From NCBI GenBank assembly GCA_030390025.1, contig CM059449.1, positions 15,190,001 to 15,254,000 on the forward strand: a stretch of DNA of 64,000 nt, read 5' to 3'. This stretch comes from Squalus acanthias (lineage: Eukaryota). A model generated the notes under the pieces. That model was not told where the DNA came from. It was given only the letters and a program-made list of their open reading frames with translations, and ran no database searches. How positions within the stretch are numbered: position 1 is the stretch's first letter; each line of letters opens with the position of its first letter. Of the stretch, positions 11,079 through 53,041 are shown piece by piece. A program made the position numbers and the translations under genes.

Positions 11079-13815
11079 AAATGACCCTGCCTAATTTAAT
11101 TTACTTGAACAGTGTATACAATACAATAAAACATATTGTGCCGTAGATATAGCGCTGTAATGCACTGTGGTCTGATGCTATAGGATACAACATAACATGG
11201 AAGAAAACGAGAAGGCAATAATATAAAATATAGAGTAGGATGTACCGTATTTCACAACAATAAAACGATACAATTAGTATGGTCCAATATATAATACGCT
11301 ACCACGCAATATAAAACAGCCTAAGATTTTTCTGTGCGATATAAACGGTGTTCATATCAGATTCCGAGGCCCACTATTTTAACTGTTTACTTTAAACTAA
11401 TGGGAAAAGCAATTTAACATGAGCGCGACAAGCACTCGTGCGAGAATAGGGTGATATCCAGGCTAATCTATTATAATAGATGATATATAATACAGCATAA
11501 CATTGAAACGTACTTTTAAATATCATGTAATAATACGTCACACAAAAAAGTCAGCGTGTGGTAAGAAAATATTTTTAAATATTATATTAGCCATAAACCT
11601 TAACACTTCAAATTGACATTGTGACCAAGACGTCTAAAATGTGTCACTCAATAGCCGTTTTGGAAGCAAGAGTTATTGAATCATAGAGCCATACAGCACA
11701 GAATGAGGCCATTCGGCCCAATCTGCCTGTGCCGGCTCTCTGCAAGAGCTATTAATTAGTCCCACTCCCCCCTGCTCTTTCCCCATAGCCCTGAAACAGT
11801 ACCCTTTTTAACTATTTATCCAAATCCCTTTTGAAAGTTAATGTTGAATCTGCTTCCACCACGCTTTCAGGCAACGCATTCCAGATCACAACTCACTGAG
11901 TAAATAAAACATCTCCTCATCTCCCCTTGGCTTTTTTTTTTGCCAATACATTAAATCTGTGTCCTCTGGTTACCGACAGAATTATTAGCAGATCAATACT
12001 GAACTCATGGTCAACGGATTATACCTGATATAATAGAAAATTAACCAGATTATCAATTAAAAAAAAATAAATCGAAAGATTAAGCGTTCGGAGTTTATTA
12101 AAAGTGACAGGTTGTTCACGTTTCTTTCTGTCACCCACCTGTTTCATGGATCACTGCGTAGAGCGGATCTGGACTGAAGCAAAAGAGGACATCAGAAAAT
12201 TTAGGTATCCAAAACAATAAAATACATTAAAGAACAAGAAAGTGGCTTTCTTTTAAAAAAAGTAGATCTATGTAAACAGTTACCTGGTGGGTTGCTGAAG
12301 AGCGACTGTGAGGAGAGAAAGACAAAGACAGAAAAATTAAAGAGCTGAAGTTATTGATTATATCTGCAAGAAGCAACTGAAATAATTGGTATCGAATGAA
12401 TTGAATCACATTTTGGGGGCAATTTTAACCAAACCCGCGGAGAAACGGATGGGATCGGGTGCAAAGTTTTGAAGTCAAATGAGAGCAACATTGGGCGGGT
12501 CTAAACCCGGCGTTTCACCCGATCCCGTGCGTGTCCCGCCGGGTGAGTTCGGATAAAATTACCAGAGAATTTGCCAACCACATGGAACTCAGTAGAGGTA
12601 CAATTAGTGCTGTTACCTCTCTTACGACGCCGGCTGATAACAACTATGACTATGATGATGATGATGATCAGGAGGGGAACCGCTACCGTTGCAAAGACGA
12701 GTGGTGGGATCATTGGTGCGGACTCGCCGTGGCTGCTCTCTCCACCACCTGTGTGTAAATGTAAAGTTTCTTTTGTGAGACAGAGCATTCAAGAGCAGGG
12801 CAATGGTCACATTGAGATTGAGGATCAGCAAATGTGACACAGATTCCCAATCCCCTTTGACATGCGGGGCTATTTCACACTGGCATACATCAAACTAGGC
12901 CACGGATCAAAACGCAAAATGTCACCAGTGGGCAACTGGAGATATTCCCACCCTGGAAGTAACACTGGGAGAAATTTAATGTAGGGACGTTTAATGGGTT
13001 GGTGCCAGTTTCCTTTCTTTTAAATGCCGGGGGGTAGAGGCGAGGTCGTGTGAGTTCTGTTAACATCGGAACTTAGAAACAGGAGGAGGCCATTCAGTCC
13101 CTCCAGCCTGTTCCACCATTCAATGAGATCATGGCTGATCTGCGACCTAACTCCATATAACCGCCTTTGGCCCATATTCCTTAATACGTTTGGTTAACAA
13201 AAATCTATCAATCTCCGATTTAGAATTAACAATTGATCTAGCATCAGTTGTCGTTTGAGGAAGAAAGTTCCAAACTTCTAGCAGACTGTGTGTGTAGAAG
13301 TGTTTCCTAATTTCACTCCTGAAAGCTCTGCTATAATTTCTACACCATGCCCCCTCGTCCTAAACTCCCCAATCAGCGGAAATAATTTCTCTCTATCTAT
13401 CATCTCTGTTCTCCTTTTTATCTCGAGAGTGTCCCGCCCAGTTTTCTTGAATTCACTAGAACCTGGAGATCCAATAGATCCTGAGCACGAACCAGAAAAT
13501 CTTCCCCTCCTATTTACGGGATGCTTAAGACAAAGCGAACATCTGGAAATTAGAAGTGCCGAGACTGGGTGGTCAACGTGGTTCTTCCGCGGACCCATCT
13601 TTGCATTTTGTTGGCGCGCAATGTTGCAATTTCTATTTGCACACACAACTATATCCGTCACTACCTCCATTTACAGGATGACAGTGAAATCTAACTTATC
13701 ATAGAAGTGTTTACCGGTTTATTTCCAATATTGGCACGCGGTGATTTCACGTGTTGCTCTCATTACGGGGCTCCAGTCTTCGCCTCGCACACTGTAACTG
13801 GGTTGACTACTTATC

Positions 13816-14005
13816 ATGATGCGGAGATGCCGGTGTTGGACTGGGGTGGACAAAATTGAGAGGTCGCACAACACCAGGTTATAGTCCAACAGTTTTATTT
13901 GAAATCACAAGCTTTCGGAGCTATCGATTTGCTCCTTCCTCCGAAAGCTTGTGATTTCAAATAAAACTGTTGGACTATAACCTGGTGTTGTGCGACCTCT
14001 CAATT
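13816..14005. mobile_element. Short Penelope fold-back (pLTR inverted repeat)
   Basis: Arms of about 65 bp in inverted orientation; flanking duplication ttgactacttatc (13803-13815, 14006-14018); absent from paralogous introns at ~1450 and ~35130. Confidence 0.85.
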
Positions 14006-27661: not shown

Positions 27662-29070
27662 ACCAGACATGGTTCTTTGAGGAAGTAACATATAGAGTGG
27701 ATAAAGGGGAACCAGTGGACGTAGTGTATTTAGACTTCCAAAAGGCATTTGACAAGGTGCCACACAAAAGATTATTGCTTAAGGTAAAAAATCACGGGAT
27801 TGGGGGTAATATTCTGGCATGGATAGAGGATTGGCTATCTAACAGAAAGCAAAGAGTTGGGATAAATGGTTCATTCTCAGACTGGCAATCAGTAACTAGT
27901 GGTGTTCCACAGGGGTCAGTGCTGGGTCCCCAACTCTTCACAATCTATATTAACGATTTGGAGGAAGGGACCAAGTGTAACATATCAAAATTTGCAGATG
28001 ATACAAAGATGGGAGGGAAAGTAGTGAGTGAGGAGGACATAAAAAACCTGCAAGGGGACATAGACAGGCTAAGTAAGTGGGCAGAGATTTGGCAGATGGA
28101 ATACAACACTGGAAAGTGTGAGGTGATGCACTTTGGCAGGAAAAATCCTAGAGCAATTTATTATCTTAATGGCAAGAAACTGGAGAGTACTGAAGTGCAA
28201 AGGGATCTGGGGGTCCTGGTGCACGAAACTCAAAAGGTTAGTATGCAGGTGCAGCAAGTGATTAAGAAGGCAAATGGAATGTTGGCTTTCATTGCTAGGG
28301 GGATAGAATATAAAAATAGGGAGGTATTGCTTCAGTTGTACAAGGTATTGGTGAGACCGCACCTGGAATACTGCATACAGTTTTGGTGTCCTTACTTAAG
28401 GAAAGACATCCTTGCTCTCGAGGGAGTGCAAAAAAGGTTCACTCGGTTAATCCCGGGGATGAGGGGGTGGTCATATGAGGAGAGGTTGGGTAGATTGGGA
28501 CTCTACTCATTGGAGTTCAGAAGAATGAGAGGCGATCTTATTGAAACATATAAGATTGTGAAGGGGTTGGATCGGGTGGATGCGGGGAGGATGTTCCCGA
28601 TGACGGGTGAGACGAGAACTAGGGGACATAGTCTTAGAATAAGGGGCTGCTCTTTCAAAACTGAGATGAGGAGGAACTACTTCACTCAGAGGGTGGTAGG
28701 TCCATGGAATATGCTGCCACAAAAAGCTGTAGAAGCTACAACATTAATTAAATTTAAAACAGAAATAGACAGTTTCCTAGAAGTAAAGGGCATTAAGGGT
28801 TACGGGGAGCGGGCAGGAATTTGGACATGAGTCTAGGTTCGGATCGGTCATGGCCCTGTGGGTAGTGGAGCGGGCCCAGGGACTGTGTAGCCTGATTCTG
28901 CTCCTATTTCGTGTGTGCAATTCTGTTAGATGCAGGAGATGGTTCTGTGATAAATAGTAGATTGGCGGTTAGGATCAGATCAGCCATGATCTTATTGAAT
29001 GGCGGAGCAGGCTCGAGGGGCCGATTGGCCTACTCCTGCTCCTATTTCTTATGTTCTTATGTTCTTATGT
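27662..29070 (+). mobile_element. 5'-truncated, young-looking CR1 LINE with uninterrupted 377-aa RT C-terminal ORF (27697-28830)
   Basis: YLDFQKAFDKVPH, PQGSVLGP, KFADDTK; (ttcttatg)n tail; tcaacagag on both sides as possible TSD. Confidence 0.93.
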
Positions 29071-29086: not shown

Positions 29087-29129
29087 TTTATTACGAAAAT
29101 ATTTTAGCAGCGGCATTAAGCAGTTTATT
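29087..29129 (-). terminator. Candidate polyadenylation signals for gene C
   Basis: Two AATAAA on the minus strand (29124-29129, 29087-29092), about 355-395 nt after the stop. Confidence 0.45.
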
Positions 29130-29482: not shown

Positions 29483-29590
29483 TTACTTCACCGAAGCGTA
29501 CAGCACCGCTTCTCGCTTCACAGGGCGCTCAGTTTGATTGCTGTCCTGAACATTCACCGTGGCGTATTGCAACTTGTCATCTCTCTCTCG
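29483..29590 (-). CDS. Gene C terminal cytoplasmic exon with two ITIMs: RERDDKLQYATVNVQDSNQTERPVKREAVLYASVK*
   Basis: Acceptor ctttcatctcaatAG, phase 0, matching the preceding exon. LQYATV and VLYASV fit (I/V/L/S)xYxx(L/V). Stop TAA. Not in the supplied ORF track. Confidence 0.85.
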   Translation of the reverse strand, partial: RERDDKLQYATVNVQDSNQTERPVKREAVLYASVK

Positions 29591-30339
29591 CTATTGAGAT
29601 GAAAGTTTTTCAGTGTTGAATAAAATATTGTAAACTGATTATTGCATAGGGCCTCAAACCCAGCGGAGCAGATGTTGTGCAGTTTCAATGGAATATAATT
29701 CAACCCAGTAAACATTCTACATATAATTAGAATATGACTCCACCTATCAAATATTGTTTCGATAAATAGGATAGATCGCGCCGTCCTAAATATTCCTGTC
29801 CTTTTGAATATATTTCAGCGAGTCAACCATTGCACGATTTAAGTAACAAGCAAGGGAAACAGTCGACCGAATGAACACATCATTATAATGTTAAAATCCA
29901 TGCATTTAGAACAATTCACACTTAATTAATTCAGGAGCAGTGGGTCAGTCAGCATCTGGGAAAGACAGAGTTACATTTGGGAATAACTGTTCAGGAGCAC
30001 TTTCCGTTGAAGGCAAAGTGCCAGATCACCGGTTACCCCGTGCTTTCTCTTCCAGGAGCTGACTGACATTCTTTGCATATCCAGCATTTTCTGTTACAGC
30101 TTCAGATTTACTCCTTATCTCGACTTTGTCAAAGTATGTGTATTTTTGCATGTGTATGCCTGGGTGCCCCTATTTTGGAGTCTATTTTAATGTTCCTGGG
30201 TGTATCTCGTGCTTTATTTATTCGTTAATGGGATGTGGGCGTCGCTGGCAAGGCCACCATTTATTGCCCATCCGTGGTTGCCCTTGAGAAGGTGGTGGTG
30301 AGCCGCCTACTTCAACCGCTGCAGTCAACCTACTTACAC

Positions 30340-31090
30340 ATTGGCCCAGAAATTGATCTCGCTCTGTTCCCGCGGGGGTAAGCCTTTCCCGCGATGTCTC
30401 ACCTCGCTTATGCTTTTTCTGATCCAGCTCGCACGAACTTGATGTTCCAGACATCAGCTGTGCTGGGCTTGCGTATCCCAGCGGCGTAGTTAATTCGTGC
30501 GAGCTGTGGGATCACGTGACTCAGTTAGAGCCAATGGCAGCACACCATCTTCCATTCATAAGTCTCACAGCATGGCTGAGAGACTTATGGATCTTACACC
30601 CCCCCAAAATAACAGCTAAACCTCAATTAAATTTAAAAAAAAACCCATCACATTAATAAAATAAGTATAGTTAATTAAATTAACCATTTTAAATAAAAAA
30701 TTAAATTTTTGAAAAAATTTAAAATCTTTTAAAAAGTTATAAAAATAAACTTACCTGTCTTTAAAGTCTATAAAAAAGATATACCTGTAAAAAAAAATTC
30801 AAAAAAATACTTAATTCACTACTTACCTTCTTAAAAGCGGGTCTTACTCCTCCTTTTTACATTTCCAAAATCTTCAGTACTTACCTGCGCGTCCAAAGCA
30901 TGAAGTGCACAGCGTGCGCGCAGCCTGTAGCGCGCACGCGATGCACTCCGGCCCCGCCCCCTTTTCGGAAGAGCAATTGCCGGTTTTCAGCGCATGCGCA
31001 GGGCATGCAGAAAACCGGCAATTGGAGTGGGAATACGCGAGAGTATGCAGTGCGTACTCTCGCGTCCGGGGATCAATTTTCGGCCCATTG
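30340..31090. mobile_element. ~750-bp non-autonomous TIR element (MITE-like) with internal hairpins, copy 1
   Basis: TIR ttggcccagaaattgatc / gatcaattttcggccca; collinear homolog at 40545-41287. Confidence 0.8.
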
Positions 31091-31767
31091 TTTTTCATAG
31101 CGGCTTTTTACAACTGAGTGGCCATTTTAGAGGACAGTTAAGAGTCAACCACATTGCTGTGGGTCTGGAGTCACATATACGTCAGACCAGGTAAGGACGG
31201 CAGATTTCCTTCCCTAAGGGGCATTAGTGAACAAGATGGGTTTTTACGACAATCCGATAGTTTCATGTCACCATTACTGATACTAGCTTTTTAGTTTAGA
31301 TTTATTTAATTAAATTTAAATTCCCTTGTTGTTGTGATAGGGTTTGAACTCACGTCGCACTGATCATTAGTCCAGGTCTGAAGGATTGCTAATGCAGTAA
31401 CATAACCACTATGCTACCAATCCCTATATATGCGTGTGCATGCACCTGCTGATTTGTGAGTGGCTATATGTATTTGCGAGTGTCTGTGAGAGCGTGTCTT
31501 TCTGTGTGTGCAGGTGTTTTAATTCTGGGACTGTCAGGTTTCATTTCATGCCTTTCCTGGTTGGCTTTCTGTTGAATTATAATGAATATTCTAGCCCCGA
31601 CTCTATTCAATTTCGATTTTCAAATTGCCGCGCCTGTGCGTAAAACTGGCATTTGGGATGGGCCGCACCTGTGCTTTACGCCTGTGTGGCAATTTGAGAA
31701 TCTACCCCACATCTCCAAAAAGAAAAGTTGAGGCTGTCCGAACTCGTTTCATCTTTAGATTTTTACA

Positions 31768-31800
31768 TCATCTGAAAGAACTTTTTACATGATAATCTAC
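31768..31800 (-). CDS. Gene C candidate alternative short terminal exon (VDYHVKSSFR*)
   Basis: Branch point ctgAc plus ttcttgtttacttttccAG, 70 nt after the preceding donor; phase 0; conserved in copy B (10457-10495). Confidence 0.5.
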   Translation of the reverse strand, partial: VDYHVKSSFR

Positions 31801-31870
31801 CTGGAAAAGTAAACAAGAAGTCAGTAGGTTTAAAAATAACAAAAATAGCCCAAGTAATTTTGCTACATAC

Positions 31871-31911
31871 CCGATTTGTCCTTCTGCACTCAGAGCTTTC
31901 ATAATTCCTCT
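31871..31911 (-). CDS. Gene C cytoplasmic exon (ERNYESSECRRTNR)
   Basis: ttctatAG acceptor and G|GTATGT donor; 41 nt, phase 1 to 0, closes the frame to the ITIM exon. Confidence 0.7.
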
Positions 31912-33448
31912 CTATAGAAAAAAGAAAGACTTGCATTTATATAGCGCCTTTCACCACCTCAGGACGTCGCTAAGCGCTTCACAGCCATTCAAGTACTTTT
32001 TGAAGTGTAGTCGCCGTTGTAATGTAGGAAACGCGGCAGCCAATTTGCGCACAGCAAGCTCCCACAATCAACAATCTGACAATGGCTAAATAAACTGTTT
32101 CAGTGATGTTGATTGAGGGACAAACATTGGTCGGGACACCGGGGAGAACTCCCCTGCTCTTCTTCAAAATAGTGCCAAGGTATCGTTTACGTTCAGCTGA
32201 GAGAGCAGACGGAGCCTCGGTTTACTGTCTCATTTAAAGACGGCATCTCTGACAGTGCAACGCTCCCTCAGTACTGCACTGGGAGTGTCAGCCTAGCTTG
32301 TTGTGCTCATGTCTCTGGAGTGGGAATTGAAACCCACAGCTTTCAATGTTTCAGAAGCGAGGATGTTACCAACTGAGCCACGGAAAATGACCCTGCCTAA
32401 TTTAATTTATTTGAACATTGTATACAATACAATACAACATATTGTCCCATAGATATAGCGTTGTAATGCACTGTGATATAATGCTATAGGATACAACATA
32501 ACATGGTAGAAAACAGGAGAACGCAATAAAATAAAGTATACAGTAGGATTTACCGTACTGCACAACAATAAAAGGATACAATTAGTATGGTTCAATATAT
32601 AATACGCTACCACGCAATATAAAACAGCATAAAGATCTTCTGTCCGATATCAACGGTGTTCATGTCAGATTCCTAGGCCCACTATTTTAACTGTTTACTT
32701 TAAACTAATGCAAAAAGCAATTTAACATGAGCGCGCCAAGCCCTCGTACGAGAATAGGTTGATGTCCAGGCTAATCTACTATAATATATGATATATAATG
32801 CAGCACAACATTGAAACGTACTTTTAAATATCATGTAATAATTCATCTCAAAAAAATCAGCGTGTGGTAAGAAAATATCATAAAATATTATTTTATCCAT
32901 AAACCTTAACACTTCCAATTGACTTTGTGGCCAATATGTGTAACATGTGTCACTCAATAGCCGTTCGGGAAACAAGAGTTATTGAATCATAGAATCAGAC
33001 AGCACAGAAGGAGGCCATTCGGCCCAACCTGCATGTGCCGGCTCTCTGAAAGAGCTATTAATTAATCCCACTACCCCCTGCTCTTTCCCCATAGCCCTGA
33101 AAAAGTTCCCTTTTTAAGCATTTATCCAATTCCCCTTTGAAAGATATTATTGACTCTGCTTCCACCATCCTTTCAGGCAGCGCATTCCAGATCACAACAA
33201 CTCACTGAGTAAATAAAAATTCTCCTAATTTACCCTTCGCATTTTTCTCCCCAGTATCTTAAATCTGTGACCTCTGGTTGCCGACAGAATAATCAGACAG
33301 ATCAATACTGAACTATTGGTCAACGGATTATACCTGATAGAACAGAAAATTAACCATATTATCAATTAAAATCAAATTAAATCGGAGCAGTAAGCGTTCG
33401 GAGTTTATTAAAAGTGACAGGTTGTTCACGTTTCATTCTGTCACCCAC

Positions 33449-33483
33449 CTGATTCATGGATCTGTGCGTAGAACGGATCTGGA
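33449..33483 (-). CDS. Gene C cytoplasmic exon (SPDPFYAQIHES)
   Basis: tttgcttcAG acceptor and AG|GTGGGT donor; 35 nt, phase 2 to 1; YxxI motif; conserved in copy B (PLYAVI). Confidence 0.75.
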
Positions 33484-33595
33484 CTGAAGCAAAAGAGGAC
33501 ATCAGAAAATTTAGGCATCCAAAACAATAAAATACATTAAAGAAAAAGAAAGTGGCTTTCTTTTTTAAAAGTAGTAGATCGATGTAAACAGTTAC

Positions 33596-33617
33596 CTGGT
33601 GGGTTGCTGAAGAGCGA
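33596..33617 (-). CDS. Gene C 22-nt cytoplasmic exon (VALQQPT)
   Basis: ttctctcctcacAG acceptor and CAG|GTAACT donor; identical in copy B (12284-12305). Confidence 0.75.
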
Positions 33618-33928
33618 CTGTGAGGAGAGAAAAACAAAGACAGAAAAATTAAAGAGCTGAAGTTATTGATTATATCTGCAAGAAGCAACTGAAATAATTG
33701 GTATCGAATGAAGTGAATCACATTTTGGGGGCAATTTTAACTAAACCCGGGGAGAAACGGATGGGATCGGGTGCAACGTTTTGAAGTCAAATGAGACCAA
33801 TATTGGGCGGGTCTAAACCCGGCGTTCCAGCCGATCCCCTGCGTTTCCCGCCCGGTGAGTTCCGATCAAATTAGCAGAGAATTTGCCAACCACATGGAAT
33901 TCAGTAGAGGTACAATTAGTGCTGTTAC

Positions 33929-34054
33929 CTCTCTTACGATGCCGGCTGATAACAACTGTGATTATGGTGATGATCAGGAGAGGCACCGCTACCGCTGTAT
34001 AGACGAGTGGTGGGATCATTGTTGCGGACTCGCCGTGGCTGCTCTCTCCACCAC
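33929..34054 (-). CDS. Gene C stalk/transmembrane exon (SGGESSHGESATMIPPLVYTAVAVPLLIITIITVVISRHRKR)
   Basis: 126 nt, phase 1-1; uncharged TM then RHRKR. An alternative in-frame donor C|GTAAGA lies 9 nt earlier. Confidence 0.85.
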
Positions 34055-35586
34055 CTGTGTGTAAATGTAAAGTTTCTTTTGTGAGACAGAGCAGTCAAGA
34101 GCAGGGCAATGGTCACATTGAGATTGAGGATCAGCAAATGTGACACAGATTCCCAATTCCCTTTGACATGCGGGGCTATTTCACACTCGCATACATCAAA
34201 CTAGGCCACGGATCAAAACGCAAAAAGTCACCAGTGGGCAACTCGGGTTATTACCAACCTGGAAGTAACACTGGGGAGAATTTTAATGTAGGGACGCTTA
34301 ATGGGTTGGTGCCAGTTTCCTTTCTTTTAAATAGAGGGGGGTGGGGTGGGGATCGTGTGAGTTCTGTTAACATAGGAACATAGGAACAGGAGGAGGCCAT
34401 TCATCCCCTCTAGCCTTTTCCACCATTCAATGAGATCATGGCTGCTCTGCGACCTAACTCCGTATACCCGCCTTTTGCCCCATATCTCTTAAGACCTTTG
34501 GTTAACAAAACTCTGTCAATCTCCGATTTAAATTTAACAATTGATCTAGCATCAGATGTCGTTTGCGGAAGAGAGTTCCAAACTTTTACCACCCTTTGTG
34601 TGTAGAAGTGTTTCCTAATTTCACTCCTGAAAGGTCCGGCTCTAATTTCTACACCATGCCCCCTAATCCTAAACCCCCCAATCAGCTGAAGTAATTTCTG
34701 TCTATCTACCATCTCTGTTCCTCTTACTATCTCGAGAGTGTCGCTTCTCCCGCCCAGTTTTCTAGAATTCACTAGACCCTGGAGATCCAATAGTTCCAGA
34801 GCACGAATGAGAAAATCTTCCCCTCGTATTTTCGGGATGCTTAAGACAAAACGAACATCTGGAAATTAGATGTGCCGACACTGGGTGATCAACGTGGATC
34901 TTCCGCGGCCCCAATATTTGCATTTTGTTGGCGCGCAATGTTGTAATTTAAATTTACACACACAACCATATCCGTCAGTACCTCCATTTACAGGATGACA
35001 GTGAAATCGAACTTATCATACATGTGTTGTCCGGTTTATTCCCAATATTGGAACGCGGTGATTTCAAGGCTCACCTGTTGCTCTCATTACGGGGCTCAGT
35101 CTTCGCCCCGCACATTGTAACTGGGTTGACTTCTTATCTATAGTCCTACCTAAAATTGTATACAGCAACTTATTGTAATTAATATCCCCTCCATTTATTT
35201 ATTTTATAAGATCATTCTCGGGATACGGGCGACGCTGGCGAGGCGGTCATGTTATTGTCCATCTCTGGTTGACCCCTTGAGAAGGTGGTTTTGGGCCGCC
35301 TTATTCTTGAACCGCTGCAGTTCAGTGTGGTGAAGGTTCTCCCGCAGTGCTGTTAGGGAGGCAGTTCCAGGATTTTGGAAGGAACAGCGATACAAGTTCA
35401 AGTCAGGATGGTGTGTGACTTGGCGCCTACTGCCCTTGACCTTCTAGGTGGTGGATTCGCGGGTTTGGGAGTTCCAATTGATCTGATGGAAAATTTACCT
35501 ATACGGCCAGTATTACGCCCTAGAAAAATCCCATATGATTGCGAACAATTTCATTGTTAAGAATATCCCCAACAATCCAAACTTAC

Positions 35587-35937
35587 TGTATTGACGCCGT
35601 TCCACGGTCACTCTTGTTCCGGGTCCGTCTGCTGCAGCGAATCCCACGAGCTGCACTTTGCAGAAATAGAACCCAGCATCTTCCGGTTTCAATTGGATTA
35701 TTCTAATGGACGCGTTTCCCCTCTGGCTGAAATCCTCTTTACTTGCCCCGAACACCCTGCCTCTGTATTCCGCTGTATTGTTGGAAACTTCATTTCCCTG
35801 TTTGGTGCCTCGGTGCCAGGTGTAGCTGCCGATTGCTGTGGGACCCTCATATCTACAGAGCAGGTCCGCTGTCTGTCCCGCGGGTCTGGTGAGAGCTTGC
35901 GGGCTCTGAATTACGGTGATTTTTCCAACAGTAACTG
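35587..35937 (-). CDS. NCR3: Gene C membrane-proximal V exon (V2), NKp30-like
   Basis: 351-nt phase 1-1 exon, NAGNAG acceptor, intact C/W/C and GPGTRVTV. Confidence 0.88.
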
Positions 35938-37295
35938 CTGTAAGTGGGTAAAACAGACTATTTATAAATATACAGGGCACTCCTTTGCTTTTAAGCACGC
36001 CGTGGAAGGGCTGGTTTTAAGCAAATATTGGTTCGGATGATTTTTGTTAAAGTATTCATGATCTTTAACTTGAGGGAATAAAAACAGAAAACACTGGAAG
36101 CGGTCAGCAGGCCAGGCAGCATCTGTGGAGAGAGGAATAGAGTCAACGTTTAAGGCCGATGACTTTTCGTCAGAACTGGAAAAAGTTGGAGATGTAACAG
36201 GTCTTAAGCAAATGTAGGGGCAGGGGAAAGGGGGGAAGGGAGGAAGAACAAAAGGGAAGGTCTGTGATAGAGTGGAAGGCAGGGGAGATTAAATGACAAA
36301 AGGGATGATGGTACAAGTAAAAAGGAGATGGTAATGGGACAAGTAAAGGAACAAAAGATGGGTCTAGAAGAGGATTAAATTGTTAACTTGAGGGATATTG
36401 GTGCTGGAACTGGAGCGCCTTTGATTTTTGGGCGCACTCCTCGGTCAAGTATAGAATGGATCTGGTACAAAGTACCTCTGTCCCGTTCCAAATAATAAGC
36501 ATTCACTTTAATTTCAGTTCTCCCGATATGCTTTCTGTGCTGCCCGCCGCTCTCATTAACACTTTGAGCGAGAGTGTGAAATGGGTAATCTCGAATTAAA
36601 CGCCTTGCCCGATGTTCTCTTCCATTTGGGGGCCATTTTAACTTCGGGTGCTAAATAGGTGAGCTCGGGTCGGCTGCCTGAAATTAAAATCGGGGCAGGT
36701 GTACAACGGGCGGCTGATCCGATGTCGCCCGTTTCAGTCGGTCGCACAAAGTCCAAATCACCCCCAGGAAGTGAGGGGAAGTTTAATCTTATTAGTCTGA
36801 TCAGAATGGAAGTCAGATAGGTGCCAAACCCCAGCGACCTTCTCTCTATTAATCAGCGGTGACTGGAGAATATGGGAAATACAAACAGAATATTAATAGT
36901 CAAAATAATGAAACGGGATAAATGTTACATGTAGCGACATTACAAATTGGATGAAATATTTCCCACTTTGGGTATATCTTGTAAAACCGCCAATACCTCT
37001 TTACAAATTGTTTATGATTTTGCTACATCTACGGATCGGAGAAAATAGTCAATGCATTTGCAACCACGTTCCGCGCAGCAAGCAGCGCAACTCTTGCCCT
37101 GTGCTGATAACTAGAGGAATGTTGTATCCAGTTAAACTGTTAGTAATAATATGAGTTGAACATATCTCTTTCTCTCTCACACACACACGCGATTGGAACC
37201 CATTTCTCTCTCTCTCTTTTCCTATTCCTATCCATCACTTCTTGATTTAACTCGTCTACCCTCCCACTATTTCCAACCTTGATGCTGTCCACCCA

Positions 37296-38290
37296 CGTAA
37301 CTGAAGTTCCTTATCCCCGAACCATTCTCGTAAATCTTTTCTGCATCCTCTCTAAGGCCTTCACATCCTTCCTAATGTGTGGTGCCCAGAATTGGGCAAA
37401 ATACTCCAGTTGAGGCCAACCCAGAGTTTTATAATGTATCATCATAACTGCCATGCTTTGTACTCTATGCCTCTATTTATAAACCCCAGTATCCCATATT
37501 CTTTGTTAACCGCTTTCCCAATCTTGTGCACATATAACCCCAGGTCTCTCTGTTGAGGCACCCACTTTAGGATCGTAACCTTTAATTTATTTTGCCTCTC
37601 CTCGTTCTTCCTCCCGAAATGTATCACTTCGCACTTTCCTACGTTAAATTTCATCTGCCACGAGTGGTGAAGCTCCAATTAACGTATCTTCCACTATCAT
37701 TAATTGATGTTACTGGGTGTCCATTTTTGTTCGAATAATTTCGGATCAATGTATCCGTACATGAAATACAGCAATCTGTCAATTAACGTTGTACAATTAT
37801 TATGAATTGAGCCCAGATAGATCGGTCACTGCGGGGAAGGATCTCATTTCCAAGGGTCACACTTTAGACGTTAACTAGTTAGCTGTAAGAAGGGAACTTA
37901 GGCGGAAACTGTTCCCCTATAGAGTAAAAGATTTCTGGAACAAGTTACTGGAGACGGCAGTGGGAGTGGGCAGTACAAACAGATTCAAGAGACAACATGT
38001 GTGTTTTTAGAAAAAAAGTAGCCTTGACCTGTCAAACAGGGACAGTTTTTTTTTTGACATAATGATCTCATGTGTCTCACAATTTACAAGCTATTGTGAA
38101 GAATTTAAATGCTGATTGATCCAGCAATCATTGAGCTACAAACCGGTATTCAGCTGTCATTACATTGGGTCCTTTTCCCGTTTCTCAACGCAACCTTGGG
38201 AAATTGCACTCCATAATCAGATTGAACAGAGGTATACATTCGGAACCTTTATGGTGCCAAAATTAGAGGCAATTGTCACTTTATAAAGGT
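37296..38290. repeat. Duplicated copy of gene C intron-1 segment (about 39820-41580, without the MITE)
   Basis: Collinear match: CR1 piece, then ..gtatcttccactatc.., gcccagatagatcggtcact.., ttgagctacaaaccggtattcagctgtc. Confidence 0.85.
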
Positions 38291-38988
38291 GGATCTGTTG
38301 TAGAAGGCGGCTCACCACCACCTTCTCAATGGTAACTTAGGATGGGCAATAAATGCTAGGCGACGCCCACATATCAGGAACGTATTAAAAATATAGAAGG
38401 CATGTTTCCTTTTATATGGTGCGGGGATAAAACCGCACAGTGCTCTGGTCAGGTGGCATCTTGAGTATTGTGTTTAGTTCTGGTCACTCAGGCTCAAGGG
38501 AGACATGTAAGACCCGGAGGAGAAGTGAACGCTAGCCTGTTCCCTCGTGTTCTAGTGCGAGGTTATGAGAGAAAAAAAAGACTAGAAAAGCTCGGACTCA
38601 TTAACTTTGTAAAAAGGGACGAACATAGCTGCCTTAACAGAGATATGTAAGGTGCCAAGCATGAAAATCAAGGGATAATGCGAAGTACTATTTTGAGATA
38701 ACCCACACCTTCAGGTGGTGGGTTGGGCTTTGGGGGAGTAGCCTGAAGCTCGTGTAATCCTATTATTAAAGCACCGCGCCTTGAATAGTCAGATTCTAGT
38801 TAGATATATGGCACTTTCAGGATATTAATTGTCGACCAATTGTTCTGGATGTACTTTGAAAGTGATATTGACACACGGACACAATTCAGTACACCGAACT
38901 GAAATCTTTTAGTACAGCACATGTACAGCCATTCCAATGCCAAAATATTGGTAAATTCTTAAAACGAACTCTGATCTTTTTTACTCAC

Positions 38989-39327
38989 TGTCAGTTATTA
39001 TAAGTTGTGTTCCTGTCCCGCTTGCTTTCCCAACCGCCACAATTTCCACCTCGCAGTAATAAATATCTGAGTCCATTTTCGTTAAATTGATGATTTCAAG
39101 GAAAGCCATTCTTTCGGCAAATAATTTCGCCCCTGACTTCGTTATCCGGCTCTGATAGAAACGATCCCGAACCGACACTTCCGTGTTTTGTGAGGCCCGA
39201 CGCCAAACAACTCCTCCGGCAGTACCATTCGCTTCAAAAGTGCAGTTCAGCTGCACCGATCCTCCTTCTGTTGCATTAATGGCATCTGGGGACTGGAACA
39301 CTCTGATTCCACTCATCAACCCATTGT
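38989..39327 (-). CDS. NCR3: Gene C N-terminal V exon (V1), divergent NKp30-like VJ-type domain
   Basis: 339-nt phase 1-1 exon (atactccAG ... A|GTGAGT); VFQSP..EGGSVQLNC..VVW..DSDIYYCEVEIVAVGKASGTGTQLII. Confidence 0.85.
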
Positions 39328-39384
39328 CTGGAGTATAAATGAAACAATGCAATCTGTCAATAGCTACCTACAGATTTACGGACC

Positions 39385-40212
39385 AGTAGAGAATTATAGA
39401 ATGGTTACAGCACAGAAGGAGGCCATTCGGCCCGTCGAGCCCGTGCCGGCTCTCTGCAAGAGCACTTCAGCTAGTCCCACTCCCCCGCCCTTTCCCCTTA
39501 GCCCTGCATTTTTTTCCTTCAGGTACTTATCCAACTCCCTTTTGAAAGCCACGATTGAGTCTGCCTCCACCAACCTTTCAGGCAGTGCATTCCAGGTCCT
39601 AACCACTCGCTGCGTAAAAAGGTTTTTCTCATGTCGCCTTTGGTTCTTTTGCCAATCGCCTTAAATCTGTGTCCTCTAGTTCTCAACCCTTCCACCAATG
39701 GGAACAGTTTCTCTCTATCTACTCTGTCTAGACCTCTCATGATTTTGAACACCTCTGTCATATCTCTTCTCAACCTTCTCTGCTCTAAGGAGAACAACTC
39801 CGACTTCTCTAGTCTATCCTCGTAACTGAAGTTCCTCATCCCTGAATCATTCTCGTAAATATTTTCTTCCCCATCTCTGAGGCCTTCACATCGTTCCTAA
39901 AGTGCGGTGCCCAGAATTGGACACAATACTCCAGTTGAAGCCGAACCAGTGTTTTGTAAAGGTTCATCATAACTGCCTTGCTTTCGTACTCTATGACTCT
40001 ATTTATGAAGCCCACTATCCTGTAAGCTTTGTTCACCGCTTTCTCAACCTGCCCTGCCACCTACAATGATTTGTGCACATATACCCCCAGGTCTCTCTGT
40101 TCATGCACCCACTTAATGATCGTACCCATTAGTTTATTTTGCCTCTCCTCGTTCTTCCCACCAAAATGTATCACTTCGCACTTTCCTGCGTTGAATGTCA
40201 TCTGCCACGAGG
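39385..40212 (-). mobile_element. CR1 LINE 3' fragment in gene C intron 1
   Basis: LEYCVQFWAPHF, RRLRRDMTEVFKIMRGLDRVDRE. Confidence 0.85.
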
Positions 40213-40544
40213 GGTGAAGCTTAAATTAAAGTATCTTCCACTATCACTAACTGATGTTACTGGGTGTCCATTTTTGTTAGAATGAGTTCGGATCAATTTA
40301 TCCGTACATGAAATACCGCAACCTGTCAATTAACGTTGTACAATTATTATGAAATGAGCCCAGATAGATCGGTCACTGTGGGGAAGGATGTAATTTCCAA
40401 GGGTCATACTTTACACGTTAACTAGTTAGCAGTAAGAAGGGAAGTCAGGCGGAAACTGTTCGCCTTTCGAGGAAGAGATTTGTGGAACAAGTTGCTGGAG
40501 ACGGCCGTGGGAGTGGGCAGTACAAATAGATTGAAGAGACATAC

Positions 40545-41287
40545 TGGCCCAAAAATTCGTGAGGAAGCCTTCGTGCGAGGGTAAGGCCTCCCCGCGATCT
40601 CTCACTCTGCGTTGGCTTTTTCAGTTCCAGCTCGCACGAACTTGATGTTCTGGACAGCTGCTGTGCTGGGCTTGCCTATCCCACCGGCGTAGTTAATTCG
40701 TGCGAGCTGTGGGATCACGTGACTCAGTTAGAGGCCAATGGAAGCACACCATCTTCCATTCATAACTTTCACATAAGTGCTGTGAAAGTTATGAATACTA
40801 TAGCCCCCCAAAAGAACCGCTAAACCTCAATAAAATTAAAAAAAACATCACATTAATAAAATAAGTATAGTTAAATAAATTAACCATTTTAAATAAAAAA
40901 TTAAATCTTTGAAAAAATTTAAAATCTTTTAAAAAGTTATAAAAATAAACTTACCTGTCTTTAAAGTCTCTAAAAAAGATATACCTGTTAAAAAAAATCA
41001 AAATAATACTTAATTCACTACTTACCTTGTTAAAAGTGGGTCTTACTCCTCCTTTTTTTATGTGTAGAATCTTCCGCACTTACCTGCGCGTTGAAACCAC
41101 TAATTGCACAGCGTGCGCGCAGCCTGTAGCGCGCACGCGGTTCACCTAGGACCCGCCCCCTTTTCCATTCACCAAGTGCCGGTTTTTAGCGCATGCGCAG
41201 TGCATGCAGAAAACCGGCAATTGGAGACAGAATAGGCGAGAGTACGCAGTGCGGACTCTCGCGTAGCGGCACAAATTTTTGGGCCAA
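40545..41287. mobile_element. MITE-like TIR element, copy 2
   Basis: TIR tggcccaaaaatt / aatttttgggcca; empty site visible in the duplicated segment at ~37995. Confidence 0.85.
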
Positions 41288-42206
41288 TGTGTGTTTCTGG
41301 AGAAAGAAGCATTGATCTGTCAATCAGGGACTGGGTATTTGTGGACACAATGATCTCTTGTGTCCCAGAATTTACAAGCTATTATGAAGAATTTAAAATG
41401 CTGATTGATCCATCAATCATTGAGCTACAAACCGGTATTCAGCTGTCATTACATTGGGTCCTTTTCCAGTTTCTCAACGCAACTTTGGGAAATTAAAGTC
41501 CATAATCAGATTCAACAGCTTTTTACATTCAGAACCTTTATGGTGCAAAAATTACAGGCAATTGTCACTTTATAAAGGCGGTTCTGCTGTATTTCCACGC
41601 ACTTGGTTTTCTTTGCAAAACTATTGACATAATATAATCACCACTTCCCAACGCAGTTCTATTTCACCGTCCTACTAGGGGAAGATTTCACTTCTGTCAT
41701 CTTTAATCATTTAAGACGGAAACCTGTCCTTTATAGTCTGTTAATTGTAAGTATGAAAACTTTGGAAATGTGTTGAATATGAATCGTTTGCTAATGGAAT
41801 AAATTGTGTCGAACGCAAAGACGTTGAATTGTCGAGTAGAAGGTATAATGTCAGATAATTCCACGTGTAACACAGTCGGTTAGGAGTCCGTGAGGTAATT
41901 TATTTCCATAAGTACATTTTAGTAGGCCCTATTAATATGTTAATTTTTAATGCAAATTCACAGCATCTGCATGGAGGAGAACGTTAATGTGTATAATATA
42001 TATATGTAAAGTTCCCCGAAAGATAAAATACCGTTGAAATGGTGGATTCAACGCAAAGTAACACAGCGAAATAAAATAATTTATTTTACACACTGTAACT
42101 TCGTTATATATTAGGTCTGCATAAGGAAACAACCTGCCCAACCAAGTAACCGATATTCTTAATAAATATAGAATTAAACTGTGATCATCAGAAGATAGCG
42201 ACTCAC

Positions 42207-42264
42207 CGACATGCAAAAGTATGGTCAGTAAATTGAAGAACATCCACATGTGAATAGTTTGCAT
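42207..42264 (-). CDS. Gene C leader exon (MQTIHMWMFFNLLTILLHV|D)
   Basis: 58 nt, hydrophobic signal peptide, donor G|GTGAGT in phase 1 matching V1. Confidence 0.8.
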
Positions 42265-46224: not shown

Positions 46225-47446
46225 AGAGCGAGAGAGAGAGACAGAACCATGTGCGAGAGAGATAACTGCGGTTGTATATACAGCTTGCAATTCATTTTTT
46301 TTCCATTCCCTCACATCCGGACTCTGACTCAGGTTCACTCTCCCACTGCATTACTCAAATATTCCTGTCTGTACACGATCTGAATTTCTTTTCTGAAATG
46401 ATATCACCGCCGACAGGGAGAATGAATTGGGCTGCAGTTACCTGGGCATTCGTTATGTTCTCCGGTAAGCTTATTTCTGACACATCAGGTCCATTCAAGC
46501 AGATTTTCAACTTGCCGCCTGAGCGTAAAGCTGGCGTTGCGGTGCGGCCGCCTGTTATTGAAACGGACTGATTTTAATTTCCATTATTTCATACTGACTG
46601 TAATGAGATATTGTATGTCTTAATTAGATATTAAAAACCCATAGCGATGTCCTCCTATCTATTTGTTTTCTTATTCATATGTGTATCTGGTTAAATCTTA
46701 TTCCGATATCCCATATTTGCTGATCACAGCATCAGATTGTGGATTTAACACATTTTATATTCATGACAATCTCACCTTCAATTTAAAAAACATCAGGTTT
46801 GTGCAGACATTCTCATAGACGCGAGATTAACCATCTTAATTTCTCAACGCCGTGGTAATGAATTATGTTCTGGTAATATAATCAATCTCGCAGTTAACCA
46901 GGTCTCGCCTTAGGGTAACGCTTTTGAGGTTGCTTATTTTGAATTGAGGCATTTAAGTGAAGGGCCCATGGCCCATGGCGTAGGACAGCATCAAGGTTGG
47001 AAATAGTGGGAGGGAAGACGAGTTAAATCAAGAAGTGATGGATAGGAATAGGAAAAGAGAGAGAGAGAGAGAGAAATGGGTTCCAATCGTGCGTGTGTGT
47101 GTGAGACAGAAAGAGAGACTGAGGTAGACAGAGAGAGATAGAGAGAGCTAACCATGAGAGACGGATCAGCTCTCGGGTTACGAGGTTTATTGTATCTGGT
47201 CCAGGAGAGCACAATGTATGTTGCTCCCTGAAGTACATATTGCCCTAGTACTCTGCCTGATAGGGTGGTGGATACAGATTCAATAGTAGTCTTCAAATTG
47301 GAATTGGACAAATACTTGAAGGAGAAAAATATTGCAGGGATGGGGGAAAGACTGGGGGAGTGGGACAAACTGGATCGCTCTTCGAAAGAGCTGGCGCAGA
47401 CTCGATGAGCCGAAAGGCCTCCTTCTCTGCTGTACTATTCTATGAT

Positions 47447-50583: not shown

Positions 50584-52541
50584 AACGTTGACTCTGATTC
50601 TTTCTCCACGGATGCTGCCTGGCCTGCTGAGCGTTTCCAGTATTTTTCTGTTTTTATTCCCTCAAGTTAAAGATCATTAATACCATATCGAAAATCTAGG
50701 AACAAATATTTGCTTAAAAACCAGCCCATCCACGGCGTGCGTTAAAGCAAAGAAGAGCACTGTATATTATCAATGGTCTGTTTTACCCACTTTCAGCAGT
50801 TACTGCTGGAAACATCACCGTAATTCAGAGCCCTCAATCTCTCACCAGAACCGCGGGACAGACAGCGGAGCTGCTCTGTAGATATTAAGGTCCCACAGGA
50901 ATCGGCAGCTACACGTGGCACCGAGGCACCAAACAGGGAAATGAAGATTCCAATAATACAGCGGAATACAGAGGCAGGGTGTTCAGGGCAAGTGGAGAGG
51001 ATTTCAGACAGAGTAGACACGCGTCCATTAGAATAACCCAGCTGAAACCGGAAGATACCGGGTTCTATTTCTGCAAAGTGCAGCTCGTGGGATTCGCTGC
51101 AGCAGACGGACCCGGGACAACAGTGAGCGTGGAACGTGGTGAATCCAGTAAGTTTGGATTGGTGGAGTTATGCTTACCATGAAATTGCAACGCAATCATA
51201 TGGGATTTTTCTAGGGTAATATTCGCCGTATAGGTAAATCTCCATTAGATCAATTGGAACTCCCAAACCCCGCGAACTCCACCACCTAGATGTTCAAGAG
51301 GCAGTAGGCGCCTGGGGAAACACCACCACCTCAAGTCCCCCGCCAAGTCACACACATCCTGACTTGGACTTGTATCGCTGTTTCTTTCCAAAATCCGGGA
51401 ACTCCCTCCCTAACAGCACTGCGGGAAAACCTTCACCACACTGATGCAGCGGTTCAAGAAGAAGGCGCCCACCAGCACCTTCTCACGGGTCAACCATAGA
51501 CGGGCAATAACATGCCCGCCTCGCCAGCGTCGCCCGTATCCCGTGAATCATCTCTTAAAATAATGAATGGAGAAAATATTAATTACATTCAGTTTCTGTA
51601 TGCAATTTTAGTTAGCACTATAGATAAGTAGTCAACGCAGTTACAGTGTGCGAGGCGATGACTGTGAGCCCAGTAATGAGAGCAACACATAAGGCGTTTT
51701 GAAATCCACCGCGTGCCAATATTGGGAATAAACCGGTCAACACGTCTATGATAAGTTAGATTTCACTGTCATCCTGTAATGGATATACTGACGGATATAT
51801 TTGTGGTGTGAAATCGAATTACAACATTGCGCACCAACCAAATGAAAGATGGGCACGCGGAAGAACACGTTGATCACCCAGTGTAGGGCCGTCCTAATTT
51901 CCGGATGTTCGTTTTTGTCATAAGCATCCCATAAATACGAGGGGAAGATTTTCCCGTTCGTGCTTCTGGAACTATTGGACTCCAGCGACTAATGAATTCA
52001 GGAAACTGGGCGGGAGGAGCGAACCTCTCGAGATATTAAGGGGAACAGAGATGGTAGATAGAGAGAATTATTTCCGCTGGTTGGGGAGTTTAGGACGAGG
52101 GGGCATGTGTTATGAAATTAGGAGCCAGAACTTTCAGAGTGAAATTAGGAAACACTTCTACACACACAAAGGGTGGTTGAAGTTTGGAGCTCTTTTCTCA
52201 AACGACAACTGATGCTGGGTCAATTGTTCATTTGAAATCGGTGACTGGTAGATTTTTGTTAACCAAAGGTATTAAGGGATATGGGGCAAGAAGCCGGTAT
52301 ATGGAGTTAGGTCGCAGATCAGCCATGATCTCTTTAATGGTGGAACAGCCTGGAGGGGCTGAATGGCCTCCTCCGGTTCCTATTTTCCTATGTTAACAGA
52401 ACTCACACAATCCCCACCCCCACCACCCCGCTATTTCAAAGAAAGGAAACTGGCACCAACCCATTAAGCGTCCCTACATTAAAATTCTCCCAGTATTACT
52501 TCCAGGGTGGGAATATCTCCAGTTGCCCATTGATGACATTT

Positions 52542-53041
52542 NNNNNNNNNNNNNNNNNNNNNNNNNNNNNNNNNNNNNNNNNNNNNNNNNNNNNNNNNNN
52601 NNNNNNNNNNNNNNNNNNNNNNNNNNNNNNNNNNNNNNNNNNNNNNNNNNNNNNNNNNNNNNNNNNNNNNNNNNNNNNNNNNNNNNNNNNNNNNNNNNNN
52701 NNNNNNNNNNNNNNNNNNNNNNNNNNNNNNNNNNNNNNNNNNNNNNNNNNNNNNNNNNNNNNNNNNNNNNNNNNNNNNNNNNNNNNNNNNNNNNNNNNNN
52801 NNNNNNNNNNNNNNNNNNNNNNNNNNNNNNNNNNNNNNNNNNNNNNNNNNNNNNNNNNNNNNNNNNNNNNNNNNNNNNNNNNNNNNNNNNNNNNNNNNNN
52901 NNNNNNNNNNNNNNNNNNNNNNNNNNNNNNNNNNNNNNNNNNNNNNNNNNNNNNNNNNNNNNNNNNNNNNNNNNNNNNNNNNNNNNNNNNNNNNNNNNNN
53001 NNNNNNNNNNNNNNNNNNNNNNNNNNNNNNNNNNNNNNNNN
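52542..53041. other. Assembly gap (500 N)
   Basis: Run of N. Confidence 1.

What the first reader, a model, noticed from the sequence alone, without database searches (positions are those of the whole stretch)
29483..42264. Complete two-domain inhibitory NKp30-like receptor hidden in micro-exons
Seen: eight exons (58+339+351+126+22+35+41+108 = 1080 nt), all GT-AG with matching phases, give a 359-aa protein. It has a leader, two VJ-type V domains, an uncharged TM and a tail with FYAQI, NYES and two canonical ITIMs (LQYATV, VLYASV) 22 residues apart. Known: mammalian NKp30 is single-domain and activating, with a TM Arg that recruits CD3zeta/FcRgamma and no ITIM; Xenopus MHC-linked XMIV relatives include ITIM forms. 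Inference: this is an SHP-1/2-recruiting inhibitory member of an expanded shark NK-receptor family. The tail is invisible in the ORF track.
Basis: partly seen in the sequence, partly recalled or inferred. Interest (0 to 1): 0.9.

Follow-up and report, generated by a model that had tools for sequence, protein, structure and literature searches.

The report
Shark NKp30-like receptor gene with ITIM tail
This is one more member of the large shark family of NKp30-like immune receptors with an inhibitory-type tail, and its unusual two-domain form is possible but not shown to be made.

Summary
All eight exons exist on the minus strand, with AG/GT borders, matching phases and a 1080-nt sum.

**Supported:**
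- Both V exons are V-set domains whose best solved relative is NKp30.
- V2, the TM exon, the three micro-exons and the dual-ITIM exon are colinear with a Heterodontus RefSeq protein, XP_067865395. It has 69% identity in V and two ITIMs with the same 22-residue spacing.
- V2 falls in a supported clade with a nurse-shark NCR3.

**Unproven: the two-domain claim.**
- Close relatives of V2 are single-V.
- Homology to paralogues that carry the family leader stops at 37290, so this unit has lost its own leader.
- V1 belongs to another subfamily. Leader e1 has no homologue.
- In four probable RNA runs no contig joins V1 to V2. The middle of V1 has no cover, and the V2-like contigs come from other paralogues.

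ITIM-bearing and multi-V NCR3-like proteins are already predicted in several sharks and rays. This is therefore a new member of a known kind, possibly a recent chimera and possibly a leaderless remnant.

This scan's first readers noted similar genes elsewhere in this genome.

The parts
42207..42264 (-). e1, putative leader exon (ATG, hydrophobic core, donor GTGAGT, ends in phase 1)
   Evidence: Among 38 ATG..GT phase-1 candidates upstream of V1 (to 46000), it is the only site with both a hydrophobic core and a 6/6 donor; it appears three times, once for each nested ATG start. It has no homology to family leaders and no RNA evidence; it lay outside the stretch that was laid.
38989..39327 (-). 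e2, V1: divergent VJ-type V-set exon, phase 1-1
   Evidence: Pfam V-set 2.6e-8. Best PDB relative is NKp30, 2.1e-8. It keeps 15 of 18 family-conserved positions, including both Cys, the Trp and GxGT. It is at most 41% identical to any retrieved protein and sits on a long branch outside the V2 clade. It is the only exon of its type in the window. Depth is 0 in 39040-39239 in 4 of 4 runs.
35587..35937 (-). e3, V2: VJ-type V-set exon of the QTT61898 / XP_067865395 subfamily
   Evidence: Pfam V-set 6.9e-13. NKp30 1.5e-14. 69% identical to P0004. In a starred clade, 97/91. The exon end at 35587 is used in an RNA contig of a paralogue.
33929..34054 (-). e4, stalk plus uncharged transmembrane segment plus basic stop-transfer
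   Evidence: matches P0005, P0002, P0007. The unit B copy has the same borders. One paralogue RNA contig starts this exon 12 nt further upstream, at 34066, which is in frame.
33596..33617 (-). e5, 22-nt micro-exon
   Evidence: Best of 42 candidates against the P0004 tail, by a narrow margin of 15 to 13. 22 of 22 nt identical in unit B, with the same splice sites.
33449..33483 (-). e6, 35-nt micro-exon with a (D/N)PxY-like motif
   Evidence: Clear best of 32 candidates, 31 to 18. 31 of 35 nt identical in unit B. A similar motif is present in the nurse-shark P0005 tail.
31871..31911 (-). e7, 41-nt micro-exon
   Evidence: Best of 25 candidates, 20 to 17. The same exon is read in another frame by Heterodontus isoform X3. 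The unit B copy carries a stop.
29483..29590 (-). e8, last coding exon with two ITIMs 22 residues apart, and the stop codon
   Evidence: tblastn against P0004 gives 2.4e-8 at 59% identity; blastp gives 1e-10. It is the only strong copy in the window.
29124..29129 (-). AATAAA 353 nt after the stop; a second one follows at 390 nt
   Evidence: A motif match only.
37287..38302 (.). Repeat copy 1. At 37290 the homology to leader-bearing paralogues A and D ends
   Evidence: 37165-37290 matches 5755-5888 and 47116-46983. Unit A's 5425-6808, which carries the leader, matches only unit D.
39812..41591 (.). Repeat copy 2 (86-88% identical to copy 1, with an inserted element at 40575-41290), on the other side of V1

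Best explanation
The stretch holds a gene of the expanded shark NCR3 (NKp30-like) family.

**Gene body.** It runs V2, uncharged TM, three micro-exons, then a last exon with two ITIMs. It belongs to the same subfamily as a nurse-shark NCR3 (QTT61898) and Heterodontus XP_067865395.

**Inferred mechanism, not shown.**
- The V domain or domains bind a cell-surface ligand.
- Src-family kinases phosphorylate the two ITIM tyrosines, which lie 22 residues apart.
- The tandem SH2 domains of SHP-1 or SHP-2 dock there and dampen activation.
- With no charged TM residue, the protein would not pair with CD3zeta or FcRgamma as mammalian NKp30 does.

**5' end.** It is a chimera. A rearrangement at about 37290 removed the subfamily's own leader and promoter. 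It left the body downstream of a divergent V exon (V1) and a candidate leader (e1).
For: - The exons and their phases are confirmed.
- Both V exons are V-set, with NKp30 as the best solved relative.
- V2 is 69% identical to P0004 and lies in a 97/91 clade with named shark NCR3 proteins.
- The tail exons are colinear with P0004, which has two ITIMs at the same 22-residue spacing.
- An RNA contig of a paralogue uses the V2-exon end at 35587 and splices into the TM exon.
- Homology to leader-bearing units A and D stops at 37290, and no family leader lies on the minus strand upstream.
- None of 12 candidates between V1 and V2 is a credible leader. e1 is the only hydrophobic candidate with a perfect donor upstream of V1.
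- V1 keeps both Cys, the Trp, YxC and GxGT.
- All eight exons are open, whereas units B and D carry disabling changes.
- Two-V plus TM plus ITIM relatives are predicted elsewhere, for example Mobula P0010.
Against: - There is no RNA evidence for this locus. In 4 of 4 runs no contig joins 38989 to 35937. Depth is 0 over 39040-39239. The V2-like contigs differ from this V2 at 6-9 letters each, and no paralogue in the window carries all their variant letters; A1 carries 8 of 16.
- e1 has no homologue. V1 has no close relative of 62-196 aa.
- The closest relatives of V2 are single-V.
- 2 of the 4 units in the window are pseudogenes, so the local base rate of dead copies is high.
- Exon identity (0.92) and non-exon identity (0.909) to unit B are alike, so an open frame says little about selection.
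- Pairwise dN/dS of 0.41-0.83 rests on 24-28 differences.
Confidence: 0.45

Rival explanations
1. Leaderless remnant. The V2-to-ITIM body is a recent duplicate that lost its leader and promoter in the rearrangement at 37290. V1 and e1 are relics of a neighbouring gene, or are not transcribed. The open 359-codon reading is an accident of phase-1 Ig exons and the youth of the duplication. No protein is made.
For: - The family leader is lost.
- Units B and D in the same window are disabled.
- No contig from this exact locus turned up in 4 runs, and the middle of V1 has no cover.
- Exon and non-exon identity are alike.
- e1 has no homology.
- All Ig exons are phase 1-1, so any two of them join in frame.
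Against: - All 8 exons and 14 splice dinucleotides are intact, whereas B and D, of similar divergence, are hit.
- V1 keeps 15 of 18 conserved positions.
- A hydrophobic ATG exon with a perfect donor lies 2.9 kb upstream of V1.
- The four runs are small, of unknown tissue, and hold only low-depth family contigs.
Confidence: 0.35
2. Two transcription units. e1-V1 makes its own product: a short or secreted single-V protein, or one spliced to exons that I did not recognise. V2-TM-tail uses an unrecognised, non-homologous or far-upstream leader and remains a single-V ITIM receptor like its relatives.
For: - The closest relatives are single-V.
- V1 and V2 belong to different subfamilies.
- Family leaders are poorly conserved between subfamilies.
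Against: - None of 12 ATG..GT candidates between V1 and V2 has a signal-like core with a good donor.
- tblastn finds no TM-like or other family exon between V1 and V2.
- V1's donor, GTGAGT, would meet V2's acceptor first.
Confidence: 0.15
3. Chance assembly. The eight-exon model is an artefact of choosing AG..GT segments until a frame stays open.
For: Dozens of open AG..GT micro-segments exist in the region. e5 and e7 beat the next candidates only narrowly.
Against: - V1, V2 and e8 have significant homology.
- e6 wins clearly.
- The order and lengths match P0004.
- The same borders are kept in unit B.
- Heterodontus isoform X3 reads the e7 and e8 homologues in a second frame.
Confidence: 0.03

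Closest known systems
Shark NCR3 family: nurse-shark NCR3 QTT61898.1 (P0005), Heterodontus francisci XP_067865395.1 (P0004), Scyliorhinus canicula LOC119975537 (P0002), Chiloscyllium punctatum GCC38504 (P0007)
   Same: - A VJ-type V exon 60-69% identical to V2, in the same supported clade.
- An uncharged TM.
- The same tail order. In P0004 there are two ITIMs with the same 22-residue spacing, and the protein also ends in ..LYA(T/S)VK.
   Different: - These relatives have one V domain and the leader type M(N/D/H)W.AV.W...
- The unit here lacks that leader and has an extra, divergent V exon upstream.
- The nurse-shark cDNA protein P0005 ends after the e6-like motif, without ITIMs.
Mammalian NKp30 (NCR3; PDB 3NOI, 3PV6, 6YJP)
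   Same: It is the best solved relative of both V domains, aligned over the whole V-set domain including the J-like GxGT strand.
   Different: - The TM here has no charged residue, and the tail has two ITIMs.
- From recall, not tested here: mammalian NKp30 is single-domain, has a TM arginine and signals through CD3zeta/FcRgamma.
- Binding of a B7-H6-like ligand is untested.
Predicted multi-V NCR3-like proteins of elasmobranchs: Mobula hypostoma XP_062903900 (P0010: 2 V + TM + IQYAVI), Pristiophorus P0122, Chiloscyllium plagiosum XP_043533794 (P0009, 2 V), Heterodontus XP_067865773 (P0003, 3 V)
   Same: Two or more NKp30-like V domains ahead of a TM, and in some an ITIM tail.
   Different: In those proteins the tandem V domains are usually close kin of each other (the two Cpla domains and the Hfra d1/d2 domains pair up). 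Here V1 and V2 come from different subfamilies and are only about 31-35% alike, judged from the alignments of V1 with V2-type proteins.
Xenopus MHC-linked XMIV genes and SIRP-type paired receptors (recalled; no paper could be read)
   Same: Families of V-domain receptors that include ITIM-bearing forms. SIRP is the name RefSeq's automatic annotation gives several of these shark proteins.
   Different: Bos SIRP-beta V domains form the outgroup, separated at 100/100.

Membership tests
NCR3 / NKp30 family | Non-rearranging VJ-type V-set domain encoded in one exon (V framework plus a J-like GxGT strand) | tested here: met
   Both exons match Pfam V-set end to end. Both Cys, the Trp, YxC and GxGTxL lie within the single exon.
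NCR3 / NKp30 family | Closer to NKp30 than to other V domains | tested here: met
   Among PDB chains NKp30 ranks first for both. V2: 1.5e-14, next pIgR at 8.8e-10. V1: 2.1e-8, next TCR alpha at 7.2e-6.
NCR3 / NKp30 family | Groups with named NCR3 genes in a tree | tested here: inconclusive
   V2 is met: a 97/91 clade with nurse-shark NCR3 QTT61898. V1 lies on the NCR3-like side of the Bos SIRP outgroup, but on a long branch (0.85) with other long rows. No TCR, NITR, CD28 or XMIV rows were available.
NCR3 / NKp30 family | Linkage to the MHC | not testable with these tools
   The window holds only family exons and a reverse-transcriptase ORF. The scan's notes that speak of an MHC class III setting are unchecked.
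Mammalian-type activating NKp30 | Charged TM residue for pairing with CD3zeta/FcRgamma | tested here: not met
   The TM stretch of e4 holds no D, E, K, R or H.
ITIM-bearing inhibitory receptors | (I/V/L/S)xYxx(L/V/I) in the cytoplasmic tail, ideally two about 20-30 residues apart | tested here: met
   LQYATV and VLYASV in e8, with the tyrosines 22 residues apart. The same spacing is seen in P0004.
ITIM-bearing inhibitory receptors | Tyrosine phosphorylation and SHP-1/SHP-2 recruitment | not testable with these tools
   Needs biochemistry.
   0 of 4 runs show the junction. None holds a contig identical to this V2, so the locus itself was not sampled. e1 lay outside the 6-kb stretch that could be laid.

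The most novel reading that the evidence does not exclude
The gene is a recently born, expressed chimera. A rearrangement replaced the leader of a single-V, dual-ITIM NCR3 gene with the leader and V exon of a divergent subfamily. That created in one step a two-V inhibitory receptor with a new outer binding domain. It would be a caught-in-the-act example of how multi-domain NK-type receptors grow by exon capture.
Probability: 0.35. Interest if true: 0.5.

Novelty: new member of a known kind. Interest (0 to 1): 0.3.

Why it matters
NKp30 is the one NK receptor that can be traced from sharks to humans. This locus adds to the evidence that in sharks the family is large and includes forms of inhibitory type (uncharged TM, paired ITIMs), unlike the single activating gene of mammals.

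If the two-V mRNA exists, the break at 37290 and the repeat on both sides of V1 would document how such receptors gain domains.

As it stands, it is mainly an annotation result. The gene body is real and its tail is easily missed by ORF finders. Equivalent genes are already predicted in other elasmobranch genomes.

Tried and rejected
- **Length limit of the protein search.** I looked for a protein of this genome that would show how the locus is annotated. The search for homologous proteins with P0004 (length range 147-469 aa) gave only 3 proteins at E<=1e-10 out of 787 candidates, all from other species. With the V1 exon it gave none of 5 candidates, and with the V2 exon none of 14. Those two exon searches see only proteins of 62-203 aa.
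- **Literature.** Kinlein et al. 2021 (Immunogenetics 73:333) and Flajnik et al. 2012 (Immunogenetics 64:571) are not held. I saw only their titles in reference lists, and what I say of their content is recalled. Ohta et al. 2006 was seen only as a reference.
  - The search 'XMIV' found 5 papers, of which 4 were listed and none was relevant.
  - 'NKp30' + 'ITIM' + 'nurse shark' found 0 papers.
  - Two further searches gave nothing on shark ITIM forms (passages read).
  - I therefore cannot say whether two-V or ITIM shark NCR3 forms are in print. I asked for no supplementary files.
- **Paper passages.** PMC12227049 only confirms that NCR3 is treated as an MHC-linked, non-rearranging VJ gene and that the nurse-shark NCR3 genes are MT914154-914161.
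- **dN/dS.** The script stopped with an error at the C-D pair because I had set unit D one codon out of register. I report the three pairs already printed and did not repeat the run.
- **Tree.** In one search three paralogue exons were translated in the wrong frame. I corrected this before building the tree.
- **Rejected reading: a family leader hidden behind a transposon insertion.** Homology to units A and D does not resume anywhere upstream on the minus strand, as far as the end of the window.
- **Rejected reading: the RNA contigs come from this locus.** They differ at 6-9 letters each. Several of those differences are at positions where this V2 differs from all four paralogues in the window.

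Full report
**What is there.** Each has an AG before and a GT after every internal exon, an ATG at 42264 and a TAA ending at 29483. The phases are compatible and the lengths sum to 1080 nt. I translated each exon on its own.

- e2 (39327-38989) and e3 (35937-35587) are V-set Ig domains (Pfam E 2.6e-8 and 6.9e-13).
- e4 encodes a stalk, a hydrophobic stretch with no charged residue, and a basic stop-transfer.
- e8 carries LQYATV and VLYASV, with the tyrosines 22 residues apart.

**Is it more than chance?** Splice dinucleotides and open frames are not enough for the micro-exons. The region holds 23, 22 and 20 AG..GT segments of 22, 35 and 41 nt, and 20, 14 and 10 of them are open in the needed phase. 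Homology decides the matter.

- A search of 1.84 billion representative proteins with the V2 exon gave 413 hits at E<=0.001.
- The closest single-V hit, P0004, is Heterodontus francisci XP_067865395. It is 69% identical in V. Its tail runs TM, a QQP stretch, a PDPxxAxI stretch, an S/R-rich stretch, then two ITIMs, and ends in ..LYATVK.
They lie in colinear order.
- e8 matches at E 2.4e-8 by tblastn and at 1e-10 by blastp.
- P0004's two ITIMs have the same 22-residue spacing.
- A paralogous copy in the window keeps the same exon borders.
- Heterodontus isoform X3 (P0151) reads the homologues of e7 and e8 in a second frame, which the window also keeps open.

So e3-e8 form a genuine gene body of this family. 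e6 and e8 are firmly supported. e5 and e7 are supported mainly by their position and length.

**What family.** NKp30 (NCR3) is the best solved relative of both V domains. For V2 the E-value is 1.5e-14, with the next hit, pIgR, at 8.8e-10. For V1 it is 2.1e-8, with the next hit, TCR alpha, at 7.2e-6. The sources name the nearest proteins as NCR3, NCR3-like or (by automatic annotation) SIRP-like. They come from nurse shark, Heterodontus, Chiloscyllium, Scyliorhinus, Carcharodon and others.

I built a tree of 51 V domains:
- 46 domain pieces from 31 proteins, which I picked by rank and name out of the 150 listed;
- 5 window exons;
- unit D was left out because of its stop;
- no TCR, NITR, CD28 or XMIV rows were available.

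In that tree V2 sits with its window paralogues (100/98), inside a 97/91 clade with Heterodontus XP_067865395, Scyliorhinus LOC119975537 domain 1, nurse-shark QTT61898 and two Chiloscyllium proteins. V1 lies on the NCR3-like side of the Bos SIRP outgroup (100/100). It has a long branch (0.85) and groups with other long rows. Its best identity there is 39%; by BLASTP it is at most 41%. V1 keeps 15 of 18 positions that are at least 80% conserved in 43 non-window domains, including both Cys, the Trp, YxC and GxGT. V2 keeps 17 of 18.

**Surroundings.** The window is a cluster of such units among transposon debris.

- **Unit A (minus strand):** family leader at 6460-6419, two tandem V2-type exons (2858-2511 and 2291-1950), TM at 384-301.
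- **Unit B (minus strand):** V at 14849-14508 with the first Cys replaced by Gly. Its e7 copy holds a stop and there is no e8, so it is a pseudogene.
- **Unit D (plus strand):** leader at 46422-46463, V at 50799-51137 with an in-frame stop.
- **The finding is unit C.** It holds the only strong ITIM exon in the window.

**The weak point: the 5' end.** Unit C is 89-91% identical to A, B and D from the tail up into the intron ahead of V2. That homology stops at 37290. Unit A's next 1.4 kb, which carries its leader, matches only unit D. No family leader lies on the minus strand anywhere upstream of V2. None of 12 ATG..GT phase-1 candidates between V1 and V2 looks like a leader.

Upstream of the break lies a roughly 1-kb segment (37287-38302). 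Its 86-88% identical copy (39812-41591, split by another insert) lies on the far side of V1. V1 is the only exon of its subfamily in the window.

e1 is the only candidate upstream of V1 that combines a hydrophobic core with a GTGAGT donor. It resembles no family leader. V1 has no close relative of 62-196 aa.

The picture is of a rearrangement that put the leader and V exon of one subfamily in front of the V-TM-tail of another. A first-stage note on the same stretch reads it the same way (s1-890697).

**RNA.** The V2 exon found only two weak holders, with word shares of 0.28 and 0.16. The runs are coded and their kind is only guessed to be RNA. I laid four runs on 33440-39430 at 90% likeness.

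- One X1 contig (226 nt, 11 other letters) joins 35587 to 34066. That is a spliced form, so X1 at least holds RNA. It confirms the V2-exon end at 35587.
- V2-like contigs in X1-X3 differ from this V2 at 6-9 letters each. Of the 16 listed variants, no window paralogue carries all; A1 carries 8 of 16. Several variants sit where unit C alone differs from all four paralogues. So these contigs come from other family members, not from this locus.
- One contig (X1, 355 nt) leaves the genome at 35938 and runs on for 140 nt that match nothing in the stretch. In that paralogue, the upstream exon is therefore not this V1.
- No joint 38989>35937 is seen in 0 of 4 runs. The bin 39040-39239, inside V1, has depth 0 in 4 of 4 runs.

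This gives no support for the two-V mRNA, and it is no test of it either, because the locus itself was not sampled. e1 and e7-e8 lay outside the stretch; e5 and e6 lay inside it but had no cover.

**How it most likely works.** What is shown: the anatomy, the family, the motifs, and the loss of the native leader. What is inferred:
- The protein is a type I membrane receptor.
- Its tandem ITIMs, once phosphorylated, recruit SHP-1 or SHP-2.
- Lacking a charged TM residue, it does not use CD3zeta or FcRgamma.
- If e1 is a live first exon, V1's strong donor meets V2's acceptor next and gives a two-V protein.

I put the two-V chimera at 0.45, a leaderless remnant at 0.35, two separate units at 0.15, and chance at 0.03.

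**Novelty.** Public annotations already hold shark NCR3-like proteins with paired ITIMs (P0004, P0042). They also hold multi-V forms with a TM, some with an ITIM tail: Mobula P0010, Pristiophorus P0122, Heterodontus P0003 and Chiloscyllium P0009. A paper on eight nurse-shark NCR3 subtypes exists, but I could not read it. This scan's own first readers noted many similar genes over more than 1.6 Mb of this genome. Those notes include another two-V form 98 kb away and are unchecked.

The finding is a new member of a known kind. Its one unusual feature, the chimeric 5' end, is unproven as a working gene.

**Limits.**
- Supplementary files were not consulted.
- The joined model was never searched. 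Kin of about 359 aa could be seen only through the P0004 query and through the representative search, which has no length limit.

Noticed in passing
window 1950-2858 and 6419-6460 (minus strand): Unit A has the family leader and two tandem V2-type exons (2858-2511 and 2291-1950) that are 89% identical to each other at the protein level. Both are open. This is a second possible route to a two-V receptor, by exon duplication.
   Followed up: partly
window 10026-15636 (minus strand): Unit B is a pseudogene copy. Its V exon (14849-14508) has the first Cys replaced by Gly. Its e7 copy (10606-10566) holds a stop. No ITIM exon and no leader were found.
   Followed up: yes
window 46422-46463 and 50799-51137 (plus strand); N run 52542-53041: Unit D is an inverted copy with a family leader and a V exon that carries an in-frame stop. 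The unit runs into the assembly gap.
   Followed up: partly
window 31870-31896 and 29557-29577 (minus strand): Heterodontus isoform X3 (P0151) reads the homologues of e7 and e8 in another frame, which gives a tail without ITIMs. The window keeps that second frame open, with a stop at the matching place. Alternative splicing could therefore switch the ITIMs off. The extra Heterodontus exon that causes the shift was not found here.
   Followed up: partly
window 34055-34066 (minus strand): An RNA contig of a paralogue includes 12 more bases at the start of the TM exon. The window has AC, not AG, before that point in units A, B and C.
   Followed up: partly
window 60760-60843 (minus strand): A weak tblastn match (E 2.8) to the dual-ITIM exon, with two YxxV/L-type motifs at about the same spacing. 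It may be the last exon of another, divergent family member.
   Followed up: no
window 27697-28830 (plus strand): A 377-aa ORF with a reverse-transcriptase domain (Pfam RVT_1, 4.1e-20). Related RT fragments are scattered through the introns.
   Followed up: partly
window 37287-38302 and 39812-41591: An 86-88% identical direct repeat of about 1 kb lies on both sides of the V1 exon. The upstream copy is split by an element that also occurs at 30372-31091.
   Followed up: partly
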